From assembly GCF_006345805.1 (NCBI RefSeq), contig NC_043019.1:10105360-10169359 (forward strand): a stretch of DNA of 64,000 nt. The letters are read 5' to 3'. The stretch's first letter is position 1. Each line of letters starts with the position of its first letter. Shown here one piece after another: positions 6,409-54,640 of this stretch. The position numbers were made by a program, and so were the translations under genes. Below the pieces are notes generated by a model. That model worked only from the letters and a program-made list of their open reading frames with translations, did not search any database and had not been told where the DNA came from. This DNA comes from Octopus sinensis. Taxonomy: Eukaryota.

Positions 6409-6719
6409 CTTTTCATCCATTTTTGGTATTTGGGATGTGAAATTACTTCCACACTAGACATATGCACCACAACATCAGCAGGTAGGTGCTGGTCATCATT
6501 CTCAACTTGCAATGAAGCAAGGGACTCACTTGATAAAAGAGCATCCAAGTAGTCAATATTAGGGCATTTGGTATTTGGGATGTGAATTACTTCCAACACT
6601 AGACATATGCACCACAACATCAGCAGGTAGGTGCTGGTCATCATTCTCAACTTGCAATGAAGCAAGGGACTCACTTGATAAAAGAGCATCCAAGTAGTCA
6701 ATATTAGGGCATTCAAGAA
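6409..6719 (-). CDS. ELAC2: ELAC2 exon 11, containing a 145-bp internal tandem duplication
   Basis: cag|TTCTTGAATGC...AAAAG|gtatgg; 166 nt and in frame without the duplicate (LECPNIDYLDALL...VVVHMSSVEVISHPKYQKWMK); 311 nt and frameshifted as assembled. Confidence 0.88.
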
Positions 6720-22545: not shown

Positions 22546-24030
22546 ATATTTTATCTTACCAACCTAGAAAGAGTGGAAGACAAATTTAACTTTGATGCAA
22601 TTTGAATTTTGAAATGTAAAAGGCTGTAACTAAAAACATCAAGGAATTTTGTCCAATGCCCAGCTCTGTTGAGGACATCAACAATTTTTTGGTTCATAAC
22701 TCTGCTGAACACAGTTTAAAATTTTAGTCAAGATGCCCATGAAGAAGTTTGCACTTGTCATCAGCAATGTGGTCGGGCATGTACAGATCTAACTGATTCC
22801 TGGTAGCCACCCACAACCTCCAACAAAGTAACCAGTGGTTTCTGTTACAGACCTGAGCTGACCAAAGCCTTGCGAATGGATTTGGTTGACAGAAACAGAA
22901 AGCCCACTGTGTGTGCGTGTGTTTGTATGTCCACCACCACTCCTTGACAACCAGTGGTGGTTTGTAAGTCCTGGTGGGGATAGATTTGTTTGACTAAAAC
23001 CGTTCAACGTGGTGCCCCTGCAGGGCTGCACTTATTCTCTTTGAATCTCAACATCACTGGGATCGATGTGGCAGTGGCCTTTACAAACATTCAGTTGTTA
23101 TATTGTGAGAATTTCATCGATCCAGATGTTGAGGAAAGTCACACAGAATATCGAATGTTTATAGAATCGAATGAAATGAAATTTTGAAAGAATCTTTGAT
23201 ACTCGAGATGATAAACAATTCAATCATATATTTCGAGATTTCTGTGGCGCAAAGTAACGAGAAAAAAAATTGCATCATTCCTCGTCATTAATACTTCTAA
23301 ATTACCTAAGTGTTTTTTTTCTTTTTCTTGCTTTAAATCTGGTTTTAAAACGAAGTTGTAAGTATCGCAGTTATGTATCATTACAACTTAAAATTAGTGT
23401 TTTTAAGCGAAAGTAAAGATCACATACACCTGGTGGTTAGGGTTAGGTTTAGTGGGGGGGGGGGTCACGCCGAACAGGTATTCTTTACCTCTGCCACTTT
23501 TTATAAAGTTGTTTCTACGCTTTCGTTTACCTTATTCTACCTTAAGATTAATGGGGGGGTTTGTCACTGCCGTTTCTAATGAAATATTTATAAGTTTACT
23601 AAATGTTTGTGTTCTATAAAACCTATTTGGTTTTCGTCTCGGCATTTCGGGTACACTTCATATTTTCTCGAAATTACTCCGCAATCTTCGAAACCAATCG
23701 CAGACTAAAGGCAGCATTTAATTAAATTGTTTCTGTTAAATGTGAACCTTTACATTACGACTAAGTACGGCCTTCCTACATCCATAAAGGAAATATGGAG
23801 CTCAACTGAAGTGGATAGAAAGACACAGAAATATATTTAGTGTGTATAAAAAAAAATCAAACTCTACCACCAAAGACTCTGTAAAACTACAGTTTAATGT
23901 GTCCCTACCGTTTTAAAAGAGTAAGGTGTGATAGTAGGTTGATTTGGCTGTTATTTCTAAAAGGTTGAGCGATTGTGTAGAGACTCCAAGGTTGTTATTG
24001 CGAGCAATTAGTTAGAATTCCTTTACTTAC

Positions 24031-24317
24031 CGCACATGATCCGTTGACAGTATTACAGAGCGGGGTGTACCATAACCACCGCTACCAATAACCTCCAACT
24101 CTATTTTGCCAGGAATTGGTAATTTCCCTCCGATCTGCTCCCTGTAACGCACATGTCGAAGCTTCTCCTTCGTCGTCTGGGCTTTTGGCATCTCCTGAAG
24201 GAGTCGTTTTACTTTGTTTGCGCTGGCACGAGAATGGTAGGCTGTTAACACTGATGGCGAAGGGAAAAAGTATGTAGGTTTGGCAATTTTCCAAACTGGG
24301 AATATCAATATATTCAT
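24031..24317 (-). CDS. ELAC2: ELAC2/RNase Z(L) coding exon 1
   Basis: ATG at 24317; encodes a basic/hydroxylated presequence-like N-terminus, then KEKLRHVRYRE...LEVIGSGGYGTPRSVILSTDHVR; donor CG|GTAAGT; joins in phase with exon 2 (R-YLFNCGEG). Confidence 0.93.
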
Positions 24318-24989: not shown

Positions 24990-26049
24990 TCTCCATTTCG
25001 TCCATTTTTCTAATTTACTATTTTTCTAACTTATGTCAGTAAAATTTTGCAATGAATTCTTTTACAATTTCAGTTTCTTAAAGAAATGACTTCCTAGCAA
25101 AGTAAATAAAACACAAAGTAAATCATTTTTTTAAAACAAAGTAAATAAAACACAAAAACACAAAGTAAAAAAAATTTTTAAACAAAGTAAATAAAACAAA
25201 AACACATAGTAAGGATCGAGTAGTCACGACTAGCTAGCGCGAGTGCACGCACTGTGACCACTTTTCTTAAGTAGTACCGGAATAGCAGATCGCCGAGAGG
25301 TTGTTGAGAATATTTTATGTTGAGTTTTTAGATTTAGTGAAGTTTTGTTAATTTCATAGGCGTTATTTTTCCATGAACTTTCATTTGACTTAAATGTTTA
25401 TAATCTTTGTTACATTTCTGATCTTTCTGATATCTAAGGATGGATATTGGTGTGCATGAGTCGTTTTTCAAATGTAGTTCTAGAGAATTGAAGAGATAAA
25501 TTTAGCTTATTTTGTCCTATTCATTTTGTCCCACCTAAATTTGTCTTTAGTATGATCAATGGGAACAGGAAATTCCTTATTATATCCTACATATACTGCT
25601 AAAAAAACAACAAGAAAAACTTTTTTGAAACATCAAGGCTATGAATTAATGATTTGAAGTAAATAAAGATATTCAGTCCACATAAATAATCTACACCTGG
25701 AATCTTATGAGAAAAGATGGGATGACAAGAAGGCACATCCATTTCACCATAGCAATGAGATCCAGGTGAGGCTGAAGTGAGTAGTGGTATGCAGTTTAAA
25801 TGATAAATGGAATGTGGCCACCAGGGGGATAAACAGTAAATTTGATGGATGAGAAAAGTAGCGGTTCGGCAAAAGAGACCGATAGAATAAGTACTGGGCT
25901 TACAAAGAATAAGTCCCGGGGTCGATTTGCTCGACTAAAGGCGATGCTCCAGCATGGCCGCAATCAAATGACTGAAACAAGTAAAAGAGTATATGTTTTC
26001 AATTCAACATCTGTTTATTGTTTAAAACTTGTTGTTTTGGACACAATGA

Positions 26050-27650
26050 TTAAAAAAAATAATAATAATTGACAGATTAATGTTCTGAACAAGCTGCTGA
26101 GAAGAAGGGAGTTTGGGAATAGGATTAGCAACTGCTAATCAACAGAGTTGTAATGTCAGGGGTACTGTGACATAGGAGGAACCTAATTTCAATGTGGGTG
26201 TACTATAAGAAATCTTTTGACTCTGTCCCTCAATTGTGGATGTTAGAAGCTTTTCAAATTGTTAATGTTCCACAGAGTATACCATAGATGACCTAACCTC
26301 ATCCTGGACTACCATCTTAAAGCTGATGAGATCCATAGCATTGATATAAAACCAAAAACATATTAACCAGCACAAATAATCTTCACACCTATAGTGACAT
26401 GGACCACCTCTACCTAAAATGAAAACAAGAAAGCAGAGGTCTAACTTCAGTTCATATCTCTTCGGCAATATCTTTTAACCACCAAGCATTGAAGTGTATC
26501 CTTAGATCAAGTCTACATACAAGGCAGGTAACATCATGAGACTTGGAAAGCAGCTTCTTGAAAAGTATTTCTTGTCTGATGACCTTGAATGTATGCCAAA
26601 GAAATTGCACAGCTTTACTGCAACATATCAGACAGAAGGATGAGTGCACATCAGCAGAAGGCTATGTATGGATACGTCAATAGAAATGACAGCAACAGTG
26701 ATAATGAAAACAGTCCATTGTGGACCAACAACCAGATCCCTAAGTCTCACTTTGAAGAGTTTTCATTTGCAATCTAGGAGCAAGAAATAACAATCAAATT
26801 CTTGGTGTACAAAAGGAACATAGACACAGAGAAAACATTGAAATACGATAGCCATTAGAGACTTTGTGAAGTTAACAGTGAAGACAACATCAACATTACA
26901 AGCTGTTGTCTGAAAATGCCATTGCATTATTATCTACCAATGAGACTTGATGATGTGACCAGGACACTGTACAATGAGATCTGTTGGAAGATAAACCTGA
27001 GACCAGAGAGATACAAACCCACAGTACAGTAAACACCATTACTACTCATAATGTAAAAGAGTATTGGTGAGGGGGAATGATTCTGTCAAAGCCTCACTAA
27101 ATACAAACATAATAGAAGAGATGTAGTGATTTGGGAGAGAAAAAAGAAACTATAAAGAGCAGCAGAAATCATTTGCCCGACTTGTGTCAATATGAAGCTA
27201 AAGATCAGCAAATCAGAGAACAACTGTGCTGAGCTACCGAGAGATTTATAGGGACTCCACCCAGATTACTAGTTCAGATTTATACTTGTAATTACTGGGG
27301 CACTGGGACATGTAACAAACTATCTCAACACCAACTTTGAAAAATTAGCATTCTCAAATTCAGAAAGGAGAAAGCTAATTAGAAAACTACATATACAAGT
27401 CATCAATGGAACTGTCAAAATATTTAAAACTTACCAGAAGTTTAGCATGTAAGTTCATATGCACAGGTTTATATATACGACTATATGCATAAGTATACAT
27501 ACATAAAACAAAACATATAAATCTGCACATGCACTAACCACAAATAATTGCACATATACACACCTACATGAACAGCTACCCTGTTGGTGCATTTGAAATT
27601 TCAATGAAGGAATCATGGATTTAGGTTAGAAACTGACTCTTTCTCCATAT
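26050..27650 (+). mobile_element. R4/Dong-like RLE-type LINE relic, internally deleted
   Basis: RT motif W.DYKK.FDSVP, thumb region, and RLE-like KHNR.DVVIW.../VITGALG fragments; 3' UTR shared with 33095-33490. Confidence 0.75.
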
Positions 27651-27729
27651 GCAAGAAATCTAGAAATAAAATTAAATAATAACAGATACACACACAACAC
27701 ACATACAAATTCTCTGAGGGCACAGATGT

Positions 27730-28500
27730 TCCAAGGTGGTTGAACTGGCTTATTCTAACAGACATGGAAAAGAAATACTCATCATACCTGCAGAAAGTTA
27801 TGCATGGGTACACATGTCACAGATTGGAGAATGCCAGAAACATTGAGAGGAATTGTAGCCTCTCCTTGACATGCAATAACTACATCACAATGCATCTCGA
27901 AGTCTATGTCTTTGCTATCCAAAAACAGGAGACAGTTACTGATCAAGAAGAGAGATGTCCCTAAGCATCAATGTTGTGATTGAAAGCAAAATTATATGAT
28001 TCCAGTTTGGAAGATATCACTCTTGCCATCAGTGGCTGCTCAAAAATATCTACAAGACATTACCTCCGCATGGGACATAATGCTGCAGCCAAGAACCAGA
28101 GAATATGTACACATTTCAAGATAAAAACACAGTTGGAAAATTCCCATAAAAACAGCCATCCAGTGTCAGCACAACAGGAGAGCTTTGGGTTGTATGGGAC
28201 ACGGAGCAAAAATCATGCACCATTGTAGAGAACGGAGCACAACAGATGTGAACTTCTCTTCAAAAACTGGAGAATGGAGAACTCTCATATTCAGGCTACA
28301 GGTTTCCAGTTGTTATTATTATTGGTGCACTGGATTATGTAACAAATGACATACAAATAAAACTAGAAATGCTTGGGTTCTCCAAAAGAGAGCAAACTGA
28401 TTTGCATTTTCCAGATTCATTCCATCACAGAAATAGTAAAAATATGTAAAACATTCCAATGATTCTCCATTTGAGGCTCCTGGGTGAACATATGCACAAA
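27730..28500 (+). mobile_element. Second R4/Dong-like LINE relic (zinc-knuckle/RLE region)
   Basis: YVFAIQKQE and EDITLAISGCSK..RHYL motifs. Confidence 0.7.
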
Positions 28501-29099
28501 AACCACATATACACACAGACACAAAATCAGAAATGAAATATACACAATTGTATTCTGTTGAGTCATGCACACATATGAGTACAAGTTTACTCATATGTAC
28601 ATGAATGTGCACAATACATACATCAACCAGTTCATGTAACCACAAACCCCAAGAGCTGTCTCGATTTGAATAAGAGAGCATTGCCACTGTTAGTGACTGG
28701 CTTGAATTCTGCAAAAGAAACACCTTAAAATTATCTCAAAGACACATACATACACACACACACAAACTGTCATTCTGTGGGTTATGAGGACAAATGTTCC
28801 AGTTGATTCAGTCAATGGAACAACCTGCTCATTAGATTAACATGTGACTGAGCATTGCACGAGCACATGTACCCTTACCATAGTTTTCAAGGAGATTCAG
28901 TAAGACACAGAATGTGACAAGATTGGCCCTTTAAATTACAGGTACAACTCACTTTTGCCAGCTGAGTGTAGCTAAGTGAACTAAAGTGTCTTGTTCAAGG
29001 ACACACTGTGCTGCTAGAATTCAAACTTACGACCTTACAATCGTGATCCAAATATCCTAACCATTAAGCCATGCACCTTCACTCTCACACACACACACA

Positions 29100-29335
29100 C
29101 ACAAGAGGTGCATTCAATAAGCATCTGACTTTATTTTTCCCCACCAAAAGTTATGCTGTGTGGGCAAAACTGTTTGGGTGGGAGCTGATTCCACCCTTCC
29201 TGCAGATACGCAAAACTTTTCATGTGGGTAGGCCATGTCAGTTGCAGACTGTTACACGTAGGGTACAGACATGTAGTGCATGCTTGTCATGAAACAATCC
29301 AGGAAATTGCTGGCGATGTGGCATACGATCAGTGC
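29100..29335 (+). mobile_element. Mariner relic (5' TIR-like end and HTH fragment)
   Basis: aagaggtgcattcaataag resembles mariner TIRs; ETIQEIAGDV...SVHSILSE-like HTH fragment. Confidence 0.55.
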
Positions 29336-29339
29336 ATTC

Positions 29340-31960
29340 CATTTTAAGTGAAGAACACCCAAGATAAACTTGCCAAACGTATTCTAATGAAATTACTAAA
29401 TGGAAGTAAGCAAGATGGAAAACAAACCTTGAAGAGTTAACAATCTTTACTTCAATATTGGATGGTTAACCATCATAATAAAATGTAGGGAGAATAAGGA
29501 GTTCACATCTCACCAATTACATCTTATCCAGAAAACTCTATAGCAACTCTTCATATGAAGCTCTTCAGGGCAATGCTAATTACTTTAAAGAACTCAGGAT
29601 GATGAGAGAAAAAACTTTGCCATAGAAAGTTTAGACAGAAGACTTTATAACCTCTCCAGCAACTTTGTATAAGAGTAGCATTATGATGTAATTTCTTGGC
29701 ATGCTTTCTGACGATCCAGCCTCTCATTACACGTTGAATGAGTTGAGCTGCATGATCTCGCCTTTTCAGATACTGCTGGAGATAACACGCAATCGTCAAG
29801 ATGGCACTCTTCTTCTTTTCAAAAAGTCTTCTTGCATAAAAAGCACGGATATTTTGAGCAAAGCAAAGATCTTGAATCATTCTGGTTTGAGATCTGGAAT
29901 GAAAAGAGATGTTTTAATCTGAATGTATCATGGCTAAACTTAGGAAAGAATACTGAACCAACATTGACAATAAAACATACAGTTGATCCAGAAACTTTCC
30001 CCATTGCCGTGGGTGATTTACAAAATGAGAAGACACATGAAAGAGACTGACTTTCTACAGAAAGGCATTAAAGTGTTCATTCAAAAGAACCACGGAAGGC
30101 CAGATTGACATAGCAAATTGGCCTCCTATAGCAGAGATGAATCTTGTAGCCAAAAATGACAATTGAGCCAGCATAAAGCTATATGCCTAAGCATGATGTA
30201 CAAGCTTTACACAAGCGATTTCAATCAACTTGTCAAGGAGTGCAATAACAAGTGAAAGACATGTGGAAAGAAGGGTGAGCAGGGGTGTGTCAAACAGCTT
30301 TGGATAACAAAGATGTGCTGTCCAAAGTAAGAAAACACTACAGAAAACTTGTGACAGTGTGGCTTGGTTATAGGAAGGCATTTGACTCTATTGCTCACTT
30401 ATGGGCTGAAGTCTCTGCGCCTGACAGAAGTATCTACAACCTTACTTGGTGGCATTGAGTGGCTCACAAAGGCCTGAGCAACAATCCTCATACTCAGAGC
30501 CCCCCACCCCTTTTTTTTGCCATTGACTCCATTATTGTTTCTGCTCCAAGAATCCAATGATTACATGCTTGGGTCTGCAACTTCAAGATACCTATGTAAC
30601 CAGTACTTTCTTTGTTGACCTCCTGAAAATTTATACTAAATCGTTTACAATGCCCCAAAATGGGTGGAATTCATTAGTAATTTTCAGCAGACATTGGAGT
30701 AGAATTTTAGGGCTGAATGTGGACTGTCAGTCCACAACCCCAGAACCTGTGCATCCATGGCCTCTCTATTTCTCCTGTTCCACACATGCAATGTTACATA
30801 TACCTAGCATTGATGAAAACATATACAAAAATGCTATAAAGGAAGTTAGAGTGATCCAAGAATATTATATCAGACTTTAAAAAAAATATAGCAGTTAGAA
30901 CTCTCCTCTTACAATATTTCACAATGCCTTTTCAGCACCAGTACTGATACCAATATCTCAAATACTTGACTGATCTGTAGAAGAAATCTACTACACTGAC
31001 ATTAAAACTAACAAGGTCCTAACATCAACTGGAAACTTCCACAGAAACAGTGATATCAACAAGCTCTACCTAAGAAGAGATGAAAGAGATTGGGGTAGAA
31101 GCTTTCTCTTCCTAACAACCTCCTATACATCTCAAAGACAGCTAGACTAACATACTTCAATTATGACCTAAATGTGTACTGCTCAGTATAATAAAAACAA
31201 AAATTCCTGCATGGGTATGTTTCTCAAAGACTTGATGACACATGGACATGAACTGCATCCTCTCTTGAGATCATGACTGCTACATCACAATCACACTTCA
31301 AAATTCCTGATAAAGAAAAGAGACATTGAAACCTCTGGTGCCCCAAGATGCCATTGAAAATGCTGATTATGTCACATTCCTCTGGAAGATATTACGTGTG
31401 ATTAGCAGCTGCCCAAAAATGTTATCAAGGTACTATTGCTTAATGTAATACAATGCTGCCACTAAAACAATATAGAATGCCTTCTGAAAACAACAACAAA
31501 ATCTACCCTGAGATAAATACAAAGAATACTCCTGTTATTGAATACATGCGTAAGCATCTACACAAGCAATATTGGTGGAATATGCCAATCAAAACTTCTT
31601 CCAAGTACAAACATTACAGGCTGAATATCATTGTTTGGGATAGAGAATCAAAAGTATGTACCGTCGTTGAGGTCAGCTGCCCTCCTGATGTGAATATCTC
31701 TTTGAAAATCAAACAGAAAGAGGATAACTATAGACAACTGCTTTGAAACCTCCAGCTTCCCTCCCCAGATTATAATCCAATTTATACCAATAATAATTGG
31801 CACACTTGGTTTTGTGAGTAATAAACCTAAGTGGCAATTTGGATAAGCTAGGGGTTTCAGAAAGAAAGTAATTAACCAGTCAACTTGCATATTACGAATA
31901 CAGTTTGTCAATGGAAATATAAAAGCATCAAATTACGAACTTGTTTTTATTATCTACGTT
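29340..31960 (+). mobile_element. Third R4/Dong-like LINE relic, interrupted by the ASPM-like fragment
   Basis: LESFWFEIWNE, MYKLYTS, YRKAFDSI, and RLE YWWN...IIVWDRESKVCTVVEVSCPPDVNI motifs. Confidence 0.8.
29641..29856 (-). pseudogene. ASPM-like IQ-repeat gene fragment embedded in a LINE relic
   Basis: 72 open codons with IQ motifs (IQRVMRGWIVRK, IQSCWRGYKV); ungapped resemblance to the last IQ motifs of ASPM as recalled; both flanks read as LINE on the opposite strand. Confidence 0.7.
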
Positions 31961-32568
31961 TCAACAATAGAGTTTTGTATTTTTGATAGTAAACAACAAC
32001 TTCCTCACAGAAGAGAACATGCATGCATCTATGCACACAACTTACACACATACAAAGTTTTTATTTAGGTTGCAATGGTCTCTGTGCAGTTAGAGGGTCA
32101 TCAGGCAGCTATGGTCTTACATATTCTTCCAAGAGTCAACACTAAACTTCTAACTTTTGTTTCAATCATGTTGGATTGTGGCCTTATTGTGGCAGCACAG
32201 TGAGGAGTTTTAGATGGACAAATCAACTCCAGTATTTTTTTTTAAGCATGATACTTTCTCTATTGGTCTCTTTCAGCTGAACCACTAAGTTATGGTAACA
32301 TAAATGAACCAACACTGGTGGTCAATTTAAACATAGAATGGTGGTGGTGCTCCAGCATAGTCACAGCCTTTGGGCTGAAACATAAAGAAGAAATATGGGT
32401 AGGTAGGTAGGTATTTAATTAGAGGATATGTTAACCTCATGAGGGGATGGCTTCATCCAAGGAAATACTGGTTCAATATCTAGTATTTTTGGGGAATGAA
32501 TTTCTTTAACATAATAAGTATATATAAAGCATATAGTTTATAACCATTTAAAAGAAGAAAATGGAGAT

Positions 32569-32859
32569 TAGGAAGTTAGTAATTGTTTATTATTAACAAC
32601 AAATAAGTCATCTTCTCTTACAGCCATTTCAATTAATACTCAATAATTTAATTACAAATTTGTACATTAAATTTACATTTATGTGACATGAGTATAATTT
32701 CATCAGAGTAAAAAAGATGTACATTTGTGTTATATGTGGGCAGCCCACATAAATTTAATGTACAAATTTATAATTAAATTATTGAGTATTAATTGAAATG
32801 GCTGTAAGAAGCGAAGATGCCCAGTTTGTTGTTAATAATAAGCAATTGTTAACTTCCTA
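32569..32859. mobile_element. MITE-like foldback element with ~105-bp inverted arms
   Basis: taggaagtt...aacttccta termini; arms ~32569-32673 and ~32750-32859 are near reverse complements; TA at both ends. Confidence 0.75.
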
Positions 32860-33094
32860 ATCTCTATTTTCTTTTCTTTTAGATAGAAAGATAGATAGAT
32901 GACAGGCTCCTTTCCATTTCCATATACTAAGTCTACTCACAAGGCTTTGGTTGGCCTGAAGATATAGTAGAAGACACTTGCCTAAGATGCAACACAGTAG
33001 GACTGAACCTAGAATTATATATTTGGGAAACAAATTTCTTACCACATCCACACTTCTGTGTGTGTGTGTAAGTAAGCATGCGTGCATGTTATAA

Positions 33095-44229: not shown

Positions 44230-45167
44230 CAACGGGTTCAAAACATTATCGCTAATCATCTTAGAAAATCAATGAGGATCGCTGCCAATGATCTCCAGAT
44301 GCTGGAGTGAACTATCGGAACTGTAGTAGACAAGGAAATTCAATAGAAGTCTCATCTACAGAGGAGAGACCAAGTCATGTCTGCAAAGATATTGGAAAAC
44401 CATTTGATTCATGTTAAGCTGTTGCTTAATAAGGTTAAAAGCCCTCATGAACATGGCATGCATTGGTTCTTCTCTGATGAGAAATTCTTTGACCATGACC
44501 AAAAGCCTAGCAAGAGAAATGATAGCTGGTTATGTGCAGGTCCTTGGGAAGTCCCTAAAGTGATGCACACTAAGTTTCCAGCAACTGCAATGGTTTTAGG
44601 AGTGGTGAGTAACAAAGATCATGCCATGTCACTTTACATCTTTCCACAGAATATTAATGCTGCTGGATACATTGAGGTGCGGGAGACAGTTGTTAAGCCA
44701 TGGATGGATGAAATATGCCATGGAAGGCTTTATCTGTTTCAATAAGGTTCAGCACCATCTCACAAAGCTCATGTAACCCAGTGATGAATGTCACAACCTT
44801 TATGATCGTATAACATCGAACTTGTGGCCTCCAAACTCACCAGCTTTGAATCCAATGGACCAGTATGTTTTCAGTATTGTTGAAAGAGTGACTAATCAAC
44901 CTTCTCATAATACCATAGCTTCACTGAAGGCTGCCATTATGCAGATGATGTCTGAAACGAAAAAGGGATCTTTTAGTGCAGACATGTCAATGATTCTGGT
45001 CTCACATTGAAGCAGTCAGTTGAAGGGAGATTCATAGAATCATTTTATAAGAAAGCTTATCGGGAACATGTGCACAAGTTTTATATTAAAATACATTTGT
45101 TTTTCATTAGATTAGAGTTGTTTTTATTAAATTTCTAAATGCCATCAGATGTCTCTTGGACCCTGTA
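44230..45167 (+). mobile_element. Decayed Tc1/mariner transposase, maT/DD37D-like
   Basis: WFFSDEK, VVKPW, SAPSHK and WPPNSPALNPMD motifs with stops and frameshifts; ends in a TIR-like ...ggaccctgta followed by TA. Confidence 0.85.
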
Positions 45168-53661: not shown

Positions 53662-53914
53662 TAACTGCCTCTTTACCTTGACATTGCATAGTAGTTGAAA
53701 ACAAGTATCACCATTACACAAGCATTGCTATTTGTTTTCAGTTTTCTGTAAAAACACATATGGTTATGGGGAAATATGACCTTAATTGGAATGAAGTAAA
53801 GGTTGGTGACAGGAAAGGCATCTAGCTGTAGAAAATCTGCTTCAACAAATTCTGCCTGACTGATATGAGTATGGAAAAGTGTTAAAATGATGAGAAATAT
53901 ATATTTATGCCAGC

Positions 53915-54640
53915 ATTGCTTCCACCCTGGAAGGAGCTGCCTTAACAGCTTCTGCTGTTTTATGTTGAAACAATCTATGAATTGCTCAAATGTGGATGTG
54001 ATATATCTTGCTTTTGTAAAGGCCTTTGATAAACTTGATCATGGGATATGTCACAAGCTACAGAGACTTGGGATAGTCTGAAAACAAGGAGAGTAGATAC
54101 ATGAATTCTTAAAAAACAGAAACCAGCTTGTGGCAGCCAATGGGCAAGTGTCTTCTACTATAGCCTTAGACCAAAGCCTTGTGAGTGGATTTCATCATCA
54201 TCATCATCATCGTTTAGCATCCACTTTCCATGCTAGCATGGGTTGGACGATTCAACTGGGGTCTGGGAAGCCAGAAGGCTGCACCAGGCCAGTCAGATCT
54301 GGCGGTGTTTCTACAGCTTGATGCCCTTCCTAACGCCAACCACTCCATGAGTGTAGTGGGTGCTTTTTACGTGCCAGACGAGTCTGGCAAACGGCCACGA
54401 TCGGATGGTGCTTTTTATGTGCCACCGGCACGGGGGCCAGGCGGGGCTGGCAACGGCCACGAACGGATGGTGCTTTTTACGTGCCACAGGCACAAGGCCA
54501 GACGGGGCGGCGCTGGCAACGGCCACGTTTGGATGGTTCTCTCACATGCCACCGGCACTGGTATCACAGCTGCAATTTCCATTGATCGATTTCGATCCTG
54601 ATTCTCACTTGCCTCAACAGCAGAAACTGAAAGAAGCCCG

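What the first reader, a model, noticed from the sequence alone, without database searches (positions are those of the whole stretch)
29641..29856. Intact ASPM-like IQ-motif fragment inserted antisense within a dead LINE
Seen: 72 stop-free minus-strand codons, QNIRAFYARRLFEKKKSAILTIACYLQQYLKRRDHAAQLIQRVMRGWIVRKHAKKLHHNATLIQSCWRGYKV. On the plus strand, LINE-like protein runs up to the left edge (HRKFRQK) and resumes at the right edge (EQSKDLESFWFEIWNE). There is no poly(A) or obvious TSD. Against my unverified recollection of the last IQ motifs of human ASPM (..RAASVIQKAVRHFLLRKK..IQALWRGY), it aligns without gaps at roughly 23/72 identities. Inference: a piece of a mitotic-spindle gene was captured recently, since it is intact while the host LINE is decayed, either as a templated insertion at a break or as cargo of a chimeric LINE. 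The antisense orientation argues against a simple template switch.
Basis: partly seen in the sequence, partly recalled or inferred. Interest (0 to 1): 0.7.

Follow-up and report, generated by a model that had tools for sequence, protein, structure and literature searches.

The report
Spliced ASPM gene scrap in octopus DNA
A 217-base, intron-less scrap of the octopus ASPM spindle gene's messenger RNA was pasted backwards into old junk DNA upstream of the ELAC2 gene; it is a real but ordinary dead gene fragment, not a working gene.

Summary
The 72 stop-free codons are real and carry significant IQ motifs (Pfam IQ 33.6 bits, cut-off 20.3). The window is Octopus sinensis chromosome CM016881.1.

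The stretch is a copy of the last IQ repeats of the octopus ASPM gene. It is 94.7% identical in DNA to one complete 192-bp ASPM exon, joined directly to the first 24 bp of the next exon. The 1.1–1.4 kb intron between them is missing, so the template was spliced RNA.

ASPM lies on another chromosome, and no other ASPM exon is in the window. The same fragment with identical junctions is in the independent O. vulgaris assembly, which rules out misassembly. It lies 5.3 kb upstream of ELAC2, with no annotated gene over it. It has no poly(A) tail, no target-site duplication and no splice sites.

Its substitutions are mostly amino-acid-changing. An open frame this short is expected by chance after this much change (P about 0.6–0.8).

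The right flank is a badly decayed reverse-transcriptase element whose 3' part is also present in O. bimaculoides, so it is probably older than the insert. LINE sequence on the left flank is plausible but unproven.

Best reading: an RNA-templated patch at a chromosome break, now a neutral pseudogene fragment. Interest is low.

The parts
29665..29857 (-). Copy of one complete internal ASPM coding exon (192 bp in the parent, here with one extra A in an A-run). It encodes (S/T)NIRAFYAR...ATLIQ, which includes the last full IQ motifs of ASPM.
   Evidence: blastn gives 94.7% identity over 190 bp to L001 33537-33726 (O. bimaculoides ASPM) and to L002 45738-45927 (O. vulgaris ASPM). Parent exon limits are L001 33535-33726, L002 45736-45927 and L003 34030-34221.
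29641..29664 (-). First 24 nt of the next ASPM exon (AGTTGCTGGAGAGGTTATAAAGTC, encoding SCWRGYKV), joined directly to the previous exon with the intron removed.
   Evidence: In the parents, a 1337-bp (O. bimaculoides), 1366-bp (O. vulgaris) or 1085-bp (A. hians) intron separates the two exons. In the window they are contiguous. The flank beyond 29641 has no significant similarity to the rest of that exon (P = 0.11).
29551..29880 (-). 109-codon ATG ORF (plus stop) that contains the ASPM piece. Its extensions on both sides are antisense translations of flanking non-ASPM DNA.
   Evidence: the ORF listing. The stop-free stretch is 29554-29913. No identical or similar short protein is on record. 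No gene is called here in the O. sinensis or O. vulgaris annotations.
29858..31900 (+). Right flank: a decayed non-LTR (LINE-like) reverse-transcriptase element in plus orientation, head-to-head with the ASPM piece. It has many stops and at least 5 frame changes.
   Evidence: By-eye motif order in the three plus frames: ESFWFEIWNE, NWPPIAEM, MYKLYTS, EQGCVKQL, WLGYRKAFDSIAH, DINKLYLRRDERDWGRSF, IVWDRESKVCTVVEVSCPPDVNI, IPIIIGTLGFV. There is no Pfam or PDB hit. Its 3' part (31135 onward) is orthologous to O. bimaculoides L004 7342-8814 at 86-89%.
29105..29640 (+). Left flank: possibly the more 5' part of the same LINE-like element (for example ...DDERKNFAIESLDRR in the same frame as the right-flank ESFWFEIW). 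Unproven.
   Evidence: Frame reading only. No database hit and no other copy of the element in 340 kb of fetched octopus DNA.
24030..24317 (-). First coding exon of ELAC2 (tRNase Z), the nearest gene, 5.3 kb downstream on the same strand. The fragment lies in the ELAC2-TMEM18 intergenic region.
   Evidence: tblastn of O. bimaculoides ELAC2 (P0270) against the window finds exons from 24317 down to 1716.

Best explanation
**What it is.** The stretch is a dead, retro-copied fragment of the octopus ASPM gene.

**Proposed sequence of events.**
1. A spliced ASPM messenger RNA, transcribed on another chromosome, was reverse-transcribed over about 217 nt. That span is one whole internal exon plus 24 nt of the next.
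2. The resulting cDNA patch was joined, in the orientation opposite to the neighbouring LINE-like element, into a chromosome break. The break lay in already old, decayed LINE-like DNA, 5.3 kb upstream of ELAC2.
3. This happened in the germ line of an ancestor of O. sinensis and O. vulgaris. It most likely followed that lineage's split from O. bimaculoides.
4. Since then the fragment has drifted neutrally. Its open frame and IQ motifs are inherited from the parent and have simply not yet been hit by a stop.

**Shown:** ASPM origin, spliced template, interchromosomal copy, presence in two species, and absence of poly(A), TSD and annotation.

**Inferred:** the break-repair route (class-2-type templated insertion), that the LINE is older than the insert, and that the insert lies inside rather than beside the LINE.
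For: **ASPM origin**
- The peptide matches XP_052827235.1 (O. bimaculoides ASPM homolog, CH + IQ domains) at 64/72 residues and O. vulgaris ASPM at 65/72.
- DNA identity to the parent exon is 94.7%.

**Spliced template**
- Exon N and the first 24 nt of exon N+1 are contiguous in the window. They are 1.1-1.4 kb apart in three parent genes.
- The flanks show no similarity to the parent's neighbouring intron or exons.

**Isolated, interchromosomal copy**
- No other ASPM exon is in 64 kb.
- In O. vulgaris the parent is on OX597814.1 and the fragment on OX597836.1.

**Real sequence**
- Junctions are identical in the O. sinensis and O. vulgaris assemblies, with one SNP inside the fragment.

**No LINE-type insertion marks**
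- No poly(A) and no TSD. This matches the published definition of class 2 templated sequence insertions (PMC5110952).

**Neutrality**
- Of the 4 window-specific changes, 3 change the amino acid. Counting the two further sites shared with O. bimaculoides, it is 4 of 6.
- O. sinensis and O. vulgaris differ at 1 of 216 sites in the fragment, the same rate as the flanks (99.5%).
- P(no stop) is 0.6-0.8.
- No gene is annotated over it.

**LINE older than the insert**
- The LINE's 3' part is orthologous in O. bimaculoides at 86-89%.
- The fragment groups with the O. vulgaris parent: 4 informative sites against 2 and 1, RELL 0.73.
- The fragment is only 4.7-5.1% from either parent.
Against: - No empty site is available. 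O. bimaculoides lacks the whole 6-kb segment 25086-31134 and has 642 unrelated bp instead. So junction microhomology or deletion cannot be read, and the insert cannot be shown absent before the split.
- The topology test does not reject a pre-split origin (p-AU 0.18-0.26).
- LINE identity of the left flank is unproven. The ASPM piece may therefore sit exactly at the truncated 5' end of the LINE, which would suit a LINE-linked mechanism.
- The fragment's 5' end coincides, within 0-2 nt, with the first base of the parent exon. That is roughly a 2-3% coincidence, and simple break repair does not explain it.
Confidence: 0.6

Rival explanations
1. The ASPM piece was made in the same retrotransposition event as the LINE. 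During target-primed reverse transcription, the second DNA end primed on a bystander ASPM mRNA (a twin-priming-like event) or the enzyme switched templates. That would leave an inverted cellular cDNA at the LINE's truncated 5' end.
For: The ASPM piece abuts the first recognisable LINE residues (29858) head-to-head. This is the geometry twin priming gives (own knowledge of L1 5' inversions). The left flank is not proven to be LINE. The topology test cannot reject a pre-split age.
Against: The LINE's 3' part is shared with O. bimaculoides. A co-formed ASPM piece would then have to predate the split. Yet it shares 4 derived sites with the O. vulgaris parent. It is also only about 5% from either parent, whereas at least 7-9% would be expected from a neutral branch since the split. 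The left-flank frame and motif order look like a continuation of the LINE.
Confidence: 0.15
2. The fragment is a second-hand DNA copy. A longer processed ASPM pseudogene, or an ASPM-carrying repeat, exists elsewhere, and a piece of it reached this site by DNA-level duplication, transposition or filler capture.
For: Nothing in the data excludes it. The tools cannot search the octopus genomes for other copies. The odd ends (one exactly at an exon boundary, the other in mid-exon) do not identify the immediate donor.
Against: No second copy was seen in the window or in 340 kb of fetched octopus loci. The piece is about as close to the functional parent (10 of 214 differences) as expected for a direct copy of that age.
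Confidence: 0.12
3. The fragment is functional: a spliced exon of an unannotated gene, or a small IQ (calmodulin-binding) protein made from the 109-codon ORF.
For: The frame is open in both species, the ORF has an ATG, and the IQ motifs are significant.
Against: The parent's acceptor site is gone and no AG precedes the piece. No good donor follows it. No gene is called here in two annotations. Substitutions are mostly non-synonymous, and the only sinensis/vulgaris difference is non-synonymous. The open frame is expected by chance. No similar short protein exists in 5.8 billion sequences.
Confidence: 0.03
4. Assembly artefact: a chimeric read or cDNA contamination.
For: None beyond the general possibility.
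Against: The same 12.3-kb region, including both junctions, is present at 99.2% identity in an independent assembly of a different species. That copy carries its own SNP inside the fragment.
Confidence: 0.01

Closest known systems
Class 2 templated sequence insertions (TSI/TSIP; Onozawa and Aplan, PMC5110952)
   Same: A short piece copied from a distant locus and derived from spliced RNA. It has no target-site duplication, no poly(A) tract and no polyadenylation signal. It is heritable, that is, germ-line.
   Different: Those were described in human genomes and cell lines. Here the junction signatures of end joining (microhomology, microdeletion, untemplated bases) cannot be read, because no empty site is available. 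The event is old and fixed in two species rather than polymorphic.
Classical processed pseudogene / retrocopy made by LINE machinery (class 1 type)
   Same: Intron-less copy of a cellular mRNA on another chromosome, decaying neutrally.
   Different: It covers only about 217 nt from the middle of an mRNA with a coding sequence of about 8-9.6 kb. It is not anchored at the 3' end and has no poly(A) tail and no target-site duplication.
LINE 5' inversions by twin priming, and LINE-cellular RNA chimeras by template switching (own knowledge of mammalian L1 biology)
   Same: A cellular cDNA lies directly against the 5' side of a LINE, in inverted orientation.
   Different: The LINE appears older than the ASPM piece. 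LINE-like sequence probably continues on the other side. No composite TSD was found.
ASPM / abnormal spindle (asp) protein family
   Same: The encoded peptide is 89-90% identical to the last IQ repeats of octopus ASPM and carries significant IQ motifs.
   Different: It is only 72 of about 2,700-3,200 residues. It has no ASH domain, no CH domains and no C-terminal region, and it is not in a gene.

Membership tests
IQ calmodulin-binding motif (Pfam PF00612) | Score above the Pfam gathering threshold | tested here: met
   33.6 bits against a cut-off of 20.3, two matched stretches.
ASPM-derived sequence | Closest relative is an ASPM ortholog with the family architecture (ASH, CH, IQ array) | tested here: met
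   Best specific match is XP_052827235.1 (O. bimaculoides ASPM homolog) at 64/72 residues; O. vulgaris ASPM matches at 65/72. Pfam finds CH and IQ domains in the parent, and ASH is among the precomputed Pfam domains listed for the O. vulgaris protein. DNA identity to the parent exon is 94.7%.
ASPM gene (functional member) | Other ASPM exons or domains present at the locus | tested here: not met
   tblastn of the 2672-aa parent against the 64-kb window finds only this piece. ELAC2 occupies the downstream DNA.
RNA-derived (retro) copy | Parent intron precisely absent at an exon-exon junction | tested here: met
   Exon N and exon N+1 are contiguous in the window. Introns of 1337, 1366 and 1085 bp separate them in three parent genes.
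LINE-mediated processed pseudogene (class 1) | Poly(A) tail at the 3' end of the copy | tested here: not met
   No run of 6 or more A or T at the junction. The copy ends in mid-exon.
LINE-mediated processed pseudogene (class 1) | Target-site duplication of at least 5 bp flanking the copy | tested here: not met
   The only shared 5-mer lies 38 and 32 nt from the junctions. Nothing of 6 nt or more was found.
Class 2 templated sequence insertion | Template from a distant locus, with no TSD, poly(A) or poly(A) signal | tested here: met
   Different chromosome. No TSD or poly(A). The definition is from PMC5110952.
Class 2 templated sequence insertion | End-joining marks at the junctions (microhomology, microdeletion, untemplated bases) relative to the empty site | not testable with these tools
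   No empty site: O. bimaculoides lacks the whole 6-kb segment. No LINE consensus could be obtained.
Insertion inside a LINE | Sequence of the same LINE on both sides, adjacent in the family consensus | tested here: inconclusive
   The right side has an ordered series of RT-like motifs but no Pfam or PDB hit. The left side rests on frame reading only.
Spliced exon of a live gene | Acceptor and donor sites, plus a gene model over it | tested here: not met
   No AG precedes the piece and no consensus donor follows it. No gene is called upstream of ELAC2 in L005 or L006.

The most novel reading that the evidence does not exclude
The fragment starts at the very first base of an exon and ends 24 nt into the next. 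This could mean the template was not ordinary mature mRNA but an exon-delimited RNA species, such as a splicing- or decay-related intermediate. Alternatively, octopus germ cells may routinely patch chromosome breaks with short reverse-transcribed pieces of mRNA. If many such exon-delimited patches exist in cephalopod genomes, they would record RNA-templated break repair in an invertebrate germ line.
Probability: 0.08. Interest if true: 0.5.

Novelty: new member of a known kind. Interest (0 to 1): 0.22.

Why it matters
It matters little on its own.
- It is a clean, dated example from a cephalopod of a short spliced-RNA-derived patch without LINE insertion marks. That kind of event is so far documented mostly in human genomes.
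- It is shared by O. sinensis and O. vulgaris, so it could serve as a presence/absence marker within the O. vulgaris species complex.
- It is a cautionary case for annotation. An open frame with a significant domain hit in repeat-rich intergenic DNA can be a neutral gene scrap.

Tried and rejected
1. **Real ASPM exon with large introns:** rejected. No other ASPM exon is in 64 kb and ELAC2 sits immediately downstream.
2. **Myosin-V origin:** PDB's best hits were myosin Va IQ regions at E = 5e-5. This is generic IQ similarity, superseded by the 90% match to octopus ASPM.
3. **Other copies or short ORF homologs:** the exact ORF look-up and a homology search both found nothing.
4. **Other copies of the LINE**, to define its consensus across the insertion point: none in the window or in seven fetched octopus loci, by blastn, tblastx and motif scans.
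5. **Pfam and PDB on LINE pieces:** no hits.
6. **O. bimaculoides ortholog as an empty site:** unusable, because a 6-kb segment is replaced by 642 unrelated bp. The A. hians ortholog is too diverged.
7. **Homology continuing beyond the fragment** into the parent's next-exon sequence, upstream intron or previous exon: not significant (P = 0.11, 0.87 and 0.31).
8. **Chimeric transcript from a LINE inside the ASPM intron**, spliced to exon N: rejected, since there is no such LINE in the O. bimaculoides or O. vulgaris ASPM loci.
9. **tRNA-derived SINE at about 28990-29105:** not supported by ARAGORN or Rfam.
10. **Recalled human ELAC2 sequence:** used only as a local guide to find ELAC2 exons. The result was then verified with database proteins.

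Full report
**Observation.** The stretch lies inside a 120-codon stop-free run (29554-29913) and a 109-codon ATG ORF (29551-29880). Pfam's IQ model scores 33.6 bits against a gathering cut-off of 20.3. It is the only IQ-like stretch in the 64-kb window. Against solved structures, the best matches are the IQ necks of myosin Va at E = 5e-5, which is generic IQ similarity.

**Identity of the fragment.** I ran a full HMMER scan of 1.84 billion representative proteins with the 120-residue stretch. It returned long multi-IQ proteins.
- P0003 is XP_052827235.1, 'abnormal spindle-like microcephaly-associated protein homolog' of Octopus bimaculoides. It has CH domains and an IQ array.
- The window peptide matches its residues 2343-2414 at 64 of 72 positions.
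- It matches O. vulgaris ASPM (CAI9716381.1) at 65 of 72, and Argonauta hians ASPM at 54 of 72.
- tblastn of the whole parent protein against the window finds nothing else of ASPM.

**Spliced origin.** I fetched the parent gene loci: L001 (O. bimaculoides), L002 (O. vulgaris) and L003 (A. hians).
- Window 29665-29854 is 94.7% identical to one complete 192-bp coding exon, at L001 33535-33726 and L002 45736-45927.
- Window 29641-29664 continues directly with the first 24 nt of the next exon.
- In the three parent genes, an intron of 1337, 1366 or 1085 bp with canonical GT...AG ends separates these exons.
- The template was therefore spliced RNA.
- Beyond both ends, the window shows no significant similarity to the rest of the next exon, the upstream intron or the previous exon (P = 0.11, 0.87 and 0.31).
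- The copy is thus about 217 nt, one exon plus 24 nt.
- Its 5' end falls within 0-2 nt of the first base of the exon. With exons of about 190 nt this is roughly a 2-3% coincidence, and I cannot explain it.

**Where the window comes from, and whether the sequence is real.** ELAC2 (tRNase Z) exons run on the minus strand from 24317 to 1716. I joined the exon-bearing stretches into a rough ELAC2 query and retrieved the octopus ELAC2 proteins. I then fetched their loci with 10-kb flanks.
- The window is 100% identical to Octopus sinensis GCA_006345805.1, chromosome CM016881.1 (L005).
- The O. vulgaris locus (L006, OX597836.1) is 99.2% identical over the same 12.3 kb.
- Both junctions of the ASPM piece are identical in the two assemblies.
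- The single difference inside the piece is a CpG transition that changes Arg to His.
- Misassembly and contamination are therefore excluded, and the insertion predates the O. sinensis / O. vulgaris split.
- In O. vulgaris, ASPM is on OX597814.1 and the fragment on OX597836.1, so the copy is interchromosomal.
- No gene is called between the locus edge and ELAC2 in either annotation.
- The fragment lies 5.3 kb upstream of the ELAC2 start codon, in the ELAC2-TMEM18 intergenic region.

**Junction features.**
- There is no A or T run at either junction and no target-site duplication of 6 nt or more.
- The copy ends in mid-exon, far from the ASPM 3' end.
- The parent's acceptor site is absent, and no consensus donor follows the piece.
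- These features fail the definition of a LINE-made processed pseudogene. They fit published class 2 templated sequence insertions: short reverse-transcribed RNA patches, sometimes spanning spliced exons, used to repair double-strand breaks without TSD or poly(A) (PMC5110952).

**Neutrality.**
- Over 214 aligned sites the fragment differs from the O. vulgaris parent at 10, from the O. bimaculoides parent at 11, and the two parents differ at 13.
- Four changes are private to the fragment, and three of them change the amino acid (R to C, R to H, V to A).
- Simulation shows that a 72-codon copy with 4, 6 or 10 random substitutions stays stop-free in 81%, 73% or 60% of trials.
- Intactness is therefore no evidence of selection or extreme youth.
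- Between O. sinensis and O. vulgaris the fragment has diverged as much as its flanks, 99.5% in both cases.

**The surrounding element.** To the right, the plus strand carries an ordered series of reverse-transcriptase-element motifs. In order they are ESFWFEIWNE, NWPPIAEM, MYKLYTS, EQGCVKQL, WLGYRKAFDSIAH, DINKLYLRRDERDWGRSF, IVWDRESKVCTVVEVSCPPDVNI and IPIIIGTLGFV.
- These motifs are spread over at least five frame changes and many stops.
- This is my reading from knowledge of such elements. No piece reached significance in Pfam or PDB.
- The element's 3' part (31135 onward) and the DNA beyond it are orthologous in O. bimaculoides at 86-89% (L004 7342-8814). The element therefore predates that split.
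- In O. bimaculoides, the segment 25086-31134 is missing and is replaced by 642 unrelated bp. That species therefore offers no empty site.
- To the left of the ASPM piece, the frame that carries ESFWFEIW on the right reads ...DDERKNFAIESLDRR. This looks like the preceding part of the same protein, but I could not test it.
- No other copy of the element exists in the window or in about 340 kb of fetched octopus DNA, and the protein-search quotas were exhausted.

**Relative age.**
- Site patterns favour the fragment grouping with the O. vulgaris parent: 4 informative sites against 2 and 1.
- In a likelihood comparison this tree has RELL support of 0.73, but the alternatives are not rejected (p-AU 0.26 and 0.18).
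- The fragment's distance to either parent is about 5%. That is lower than expected if it had drifted neutrally since before the O. bimaculoides split, because neutral divergence at this locus is 11-14% in total.
- Together these points make the insert probably younger than the LINE. That argues against co-formation with the LINE (twin priming or template switching) and against LINE cargo, but the evidence is moderate.

**Conclusion.** The identification is secure. This is an intron-less, about 217-nt fragment of ASPM mRNA, copied to another chromosome, fixed in O. sinensis and O. vulgaris, unannotated and drifting neutrally. The most likely route is an RNA-templated patch at a chromosome break in old repeat DNA (confidence about 0.6). 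A LINE-linked origin (0.15) and a second-hand DNA copy (0.12) remain open because the octopus genomes could not be searched. It is a new example of a known kind of event and of low general interest.

Noticed in passing
window 6422-6713: A 145-bp tandem duplication (98% identical) covers part of an ELAC2 coding exon. Two copies exist only in the O. sinensis assembly (L005 27607-27896). O. vulgaris and O. bimaculoides have one. Since 145 is not a multiple of 3, this is either an assembly artefact or a species-specific duplication that splicing must avoid.
   Followed up: partly
window 25086-31134 versus L004 8815-9456: In the orthologous ELAC2-TMEM18 intergenic region, O. bimaculoides lacks this 6-kb segment and has 642 unrelated bp instead. 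One breakpoint lies inside the LINE-like element.
   Followed up: partly
window 29855-29857 / parent exon start (L002 45736): The 5' end of the ASPM copy coincides with the first base of the parent exon (within 0-2 nt), and its 3' end lies 24 nt into the next exon. The exon-boundary coincidence is unexplained.
   Followed up: partly
window 32546-32881: An inverted-repeat (palindromic) element. It gives a sub-threshold Rfam mir-5014 hit on both strands (33 bits against a gathering score of 101), so it is probably a MITE-like repeat rather than a microRNA gene.
   Followed up: no
window 44347-45007 (+): Remnant of a Tc1/mariner-like transposase. Two stop-free stretches read ...WFFSDEKFF... and ...NLWPPNSPALNPMD.... 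Identified by eye only.
   Followed up: no
window 53869-54078 (+): A second, unrelated reverse-transcriptase remnant (…VIYLAFVKAFDKLDH…). Identified by eye only.
   Followed up: no
window 1716-24317 (-): The ELAC2 (tRNase Z long form) gene runs off the left end of the window. Its exons are 87-100% identical at protein level to O. bimaculoides ELAC2. The protein is identical between O. sinensis and O. vulgaris.
   Followed up: yes
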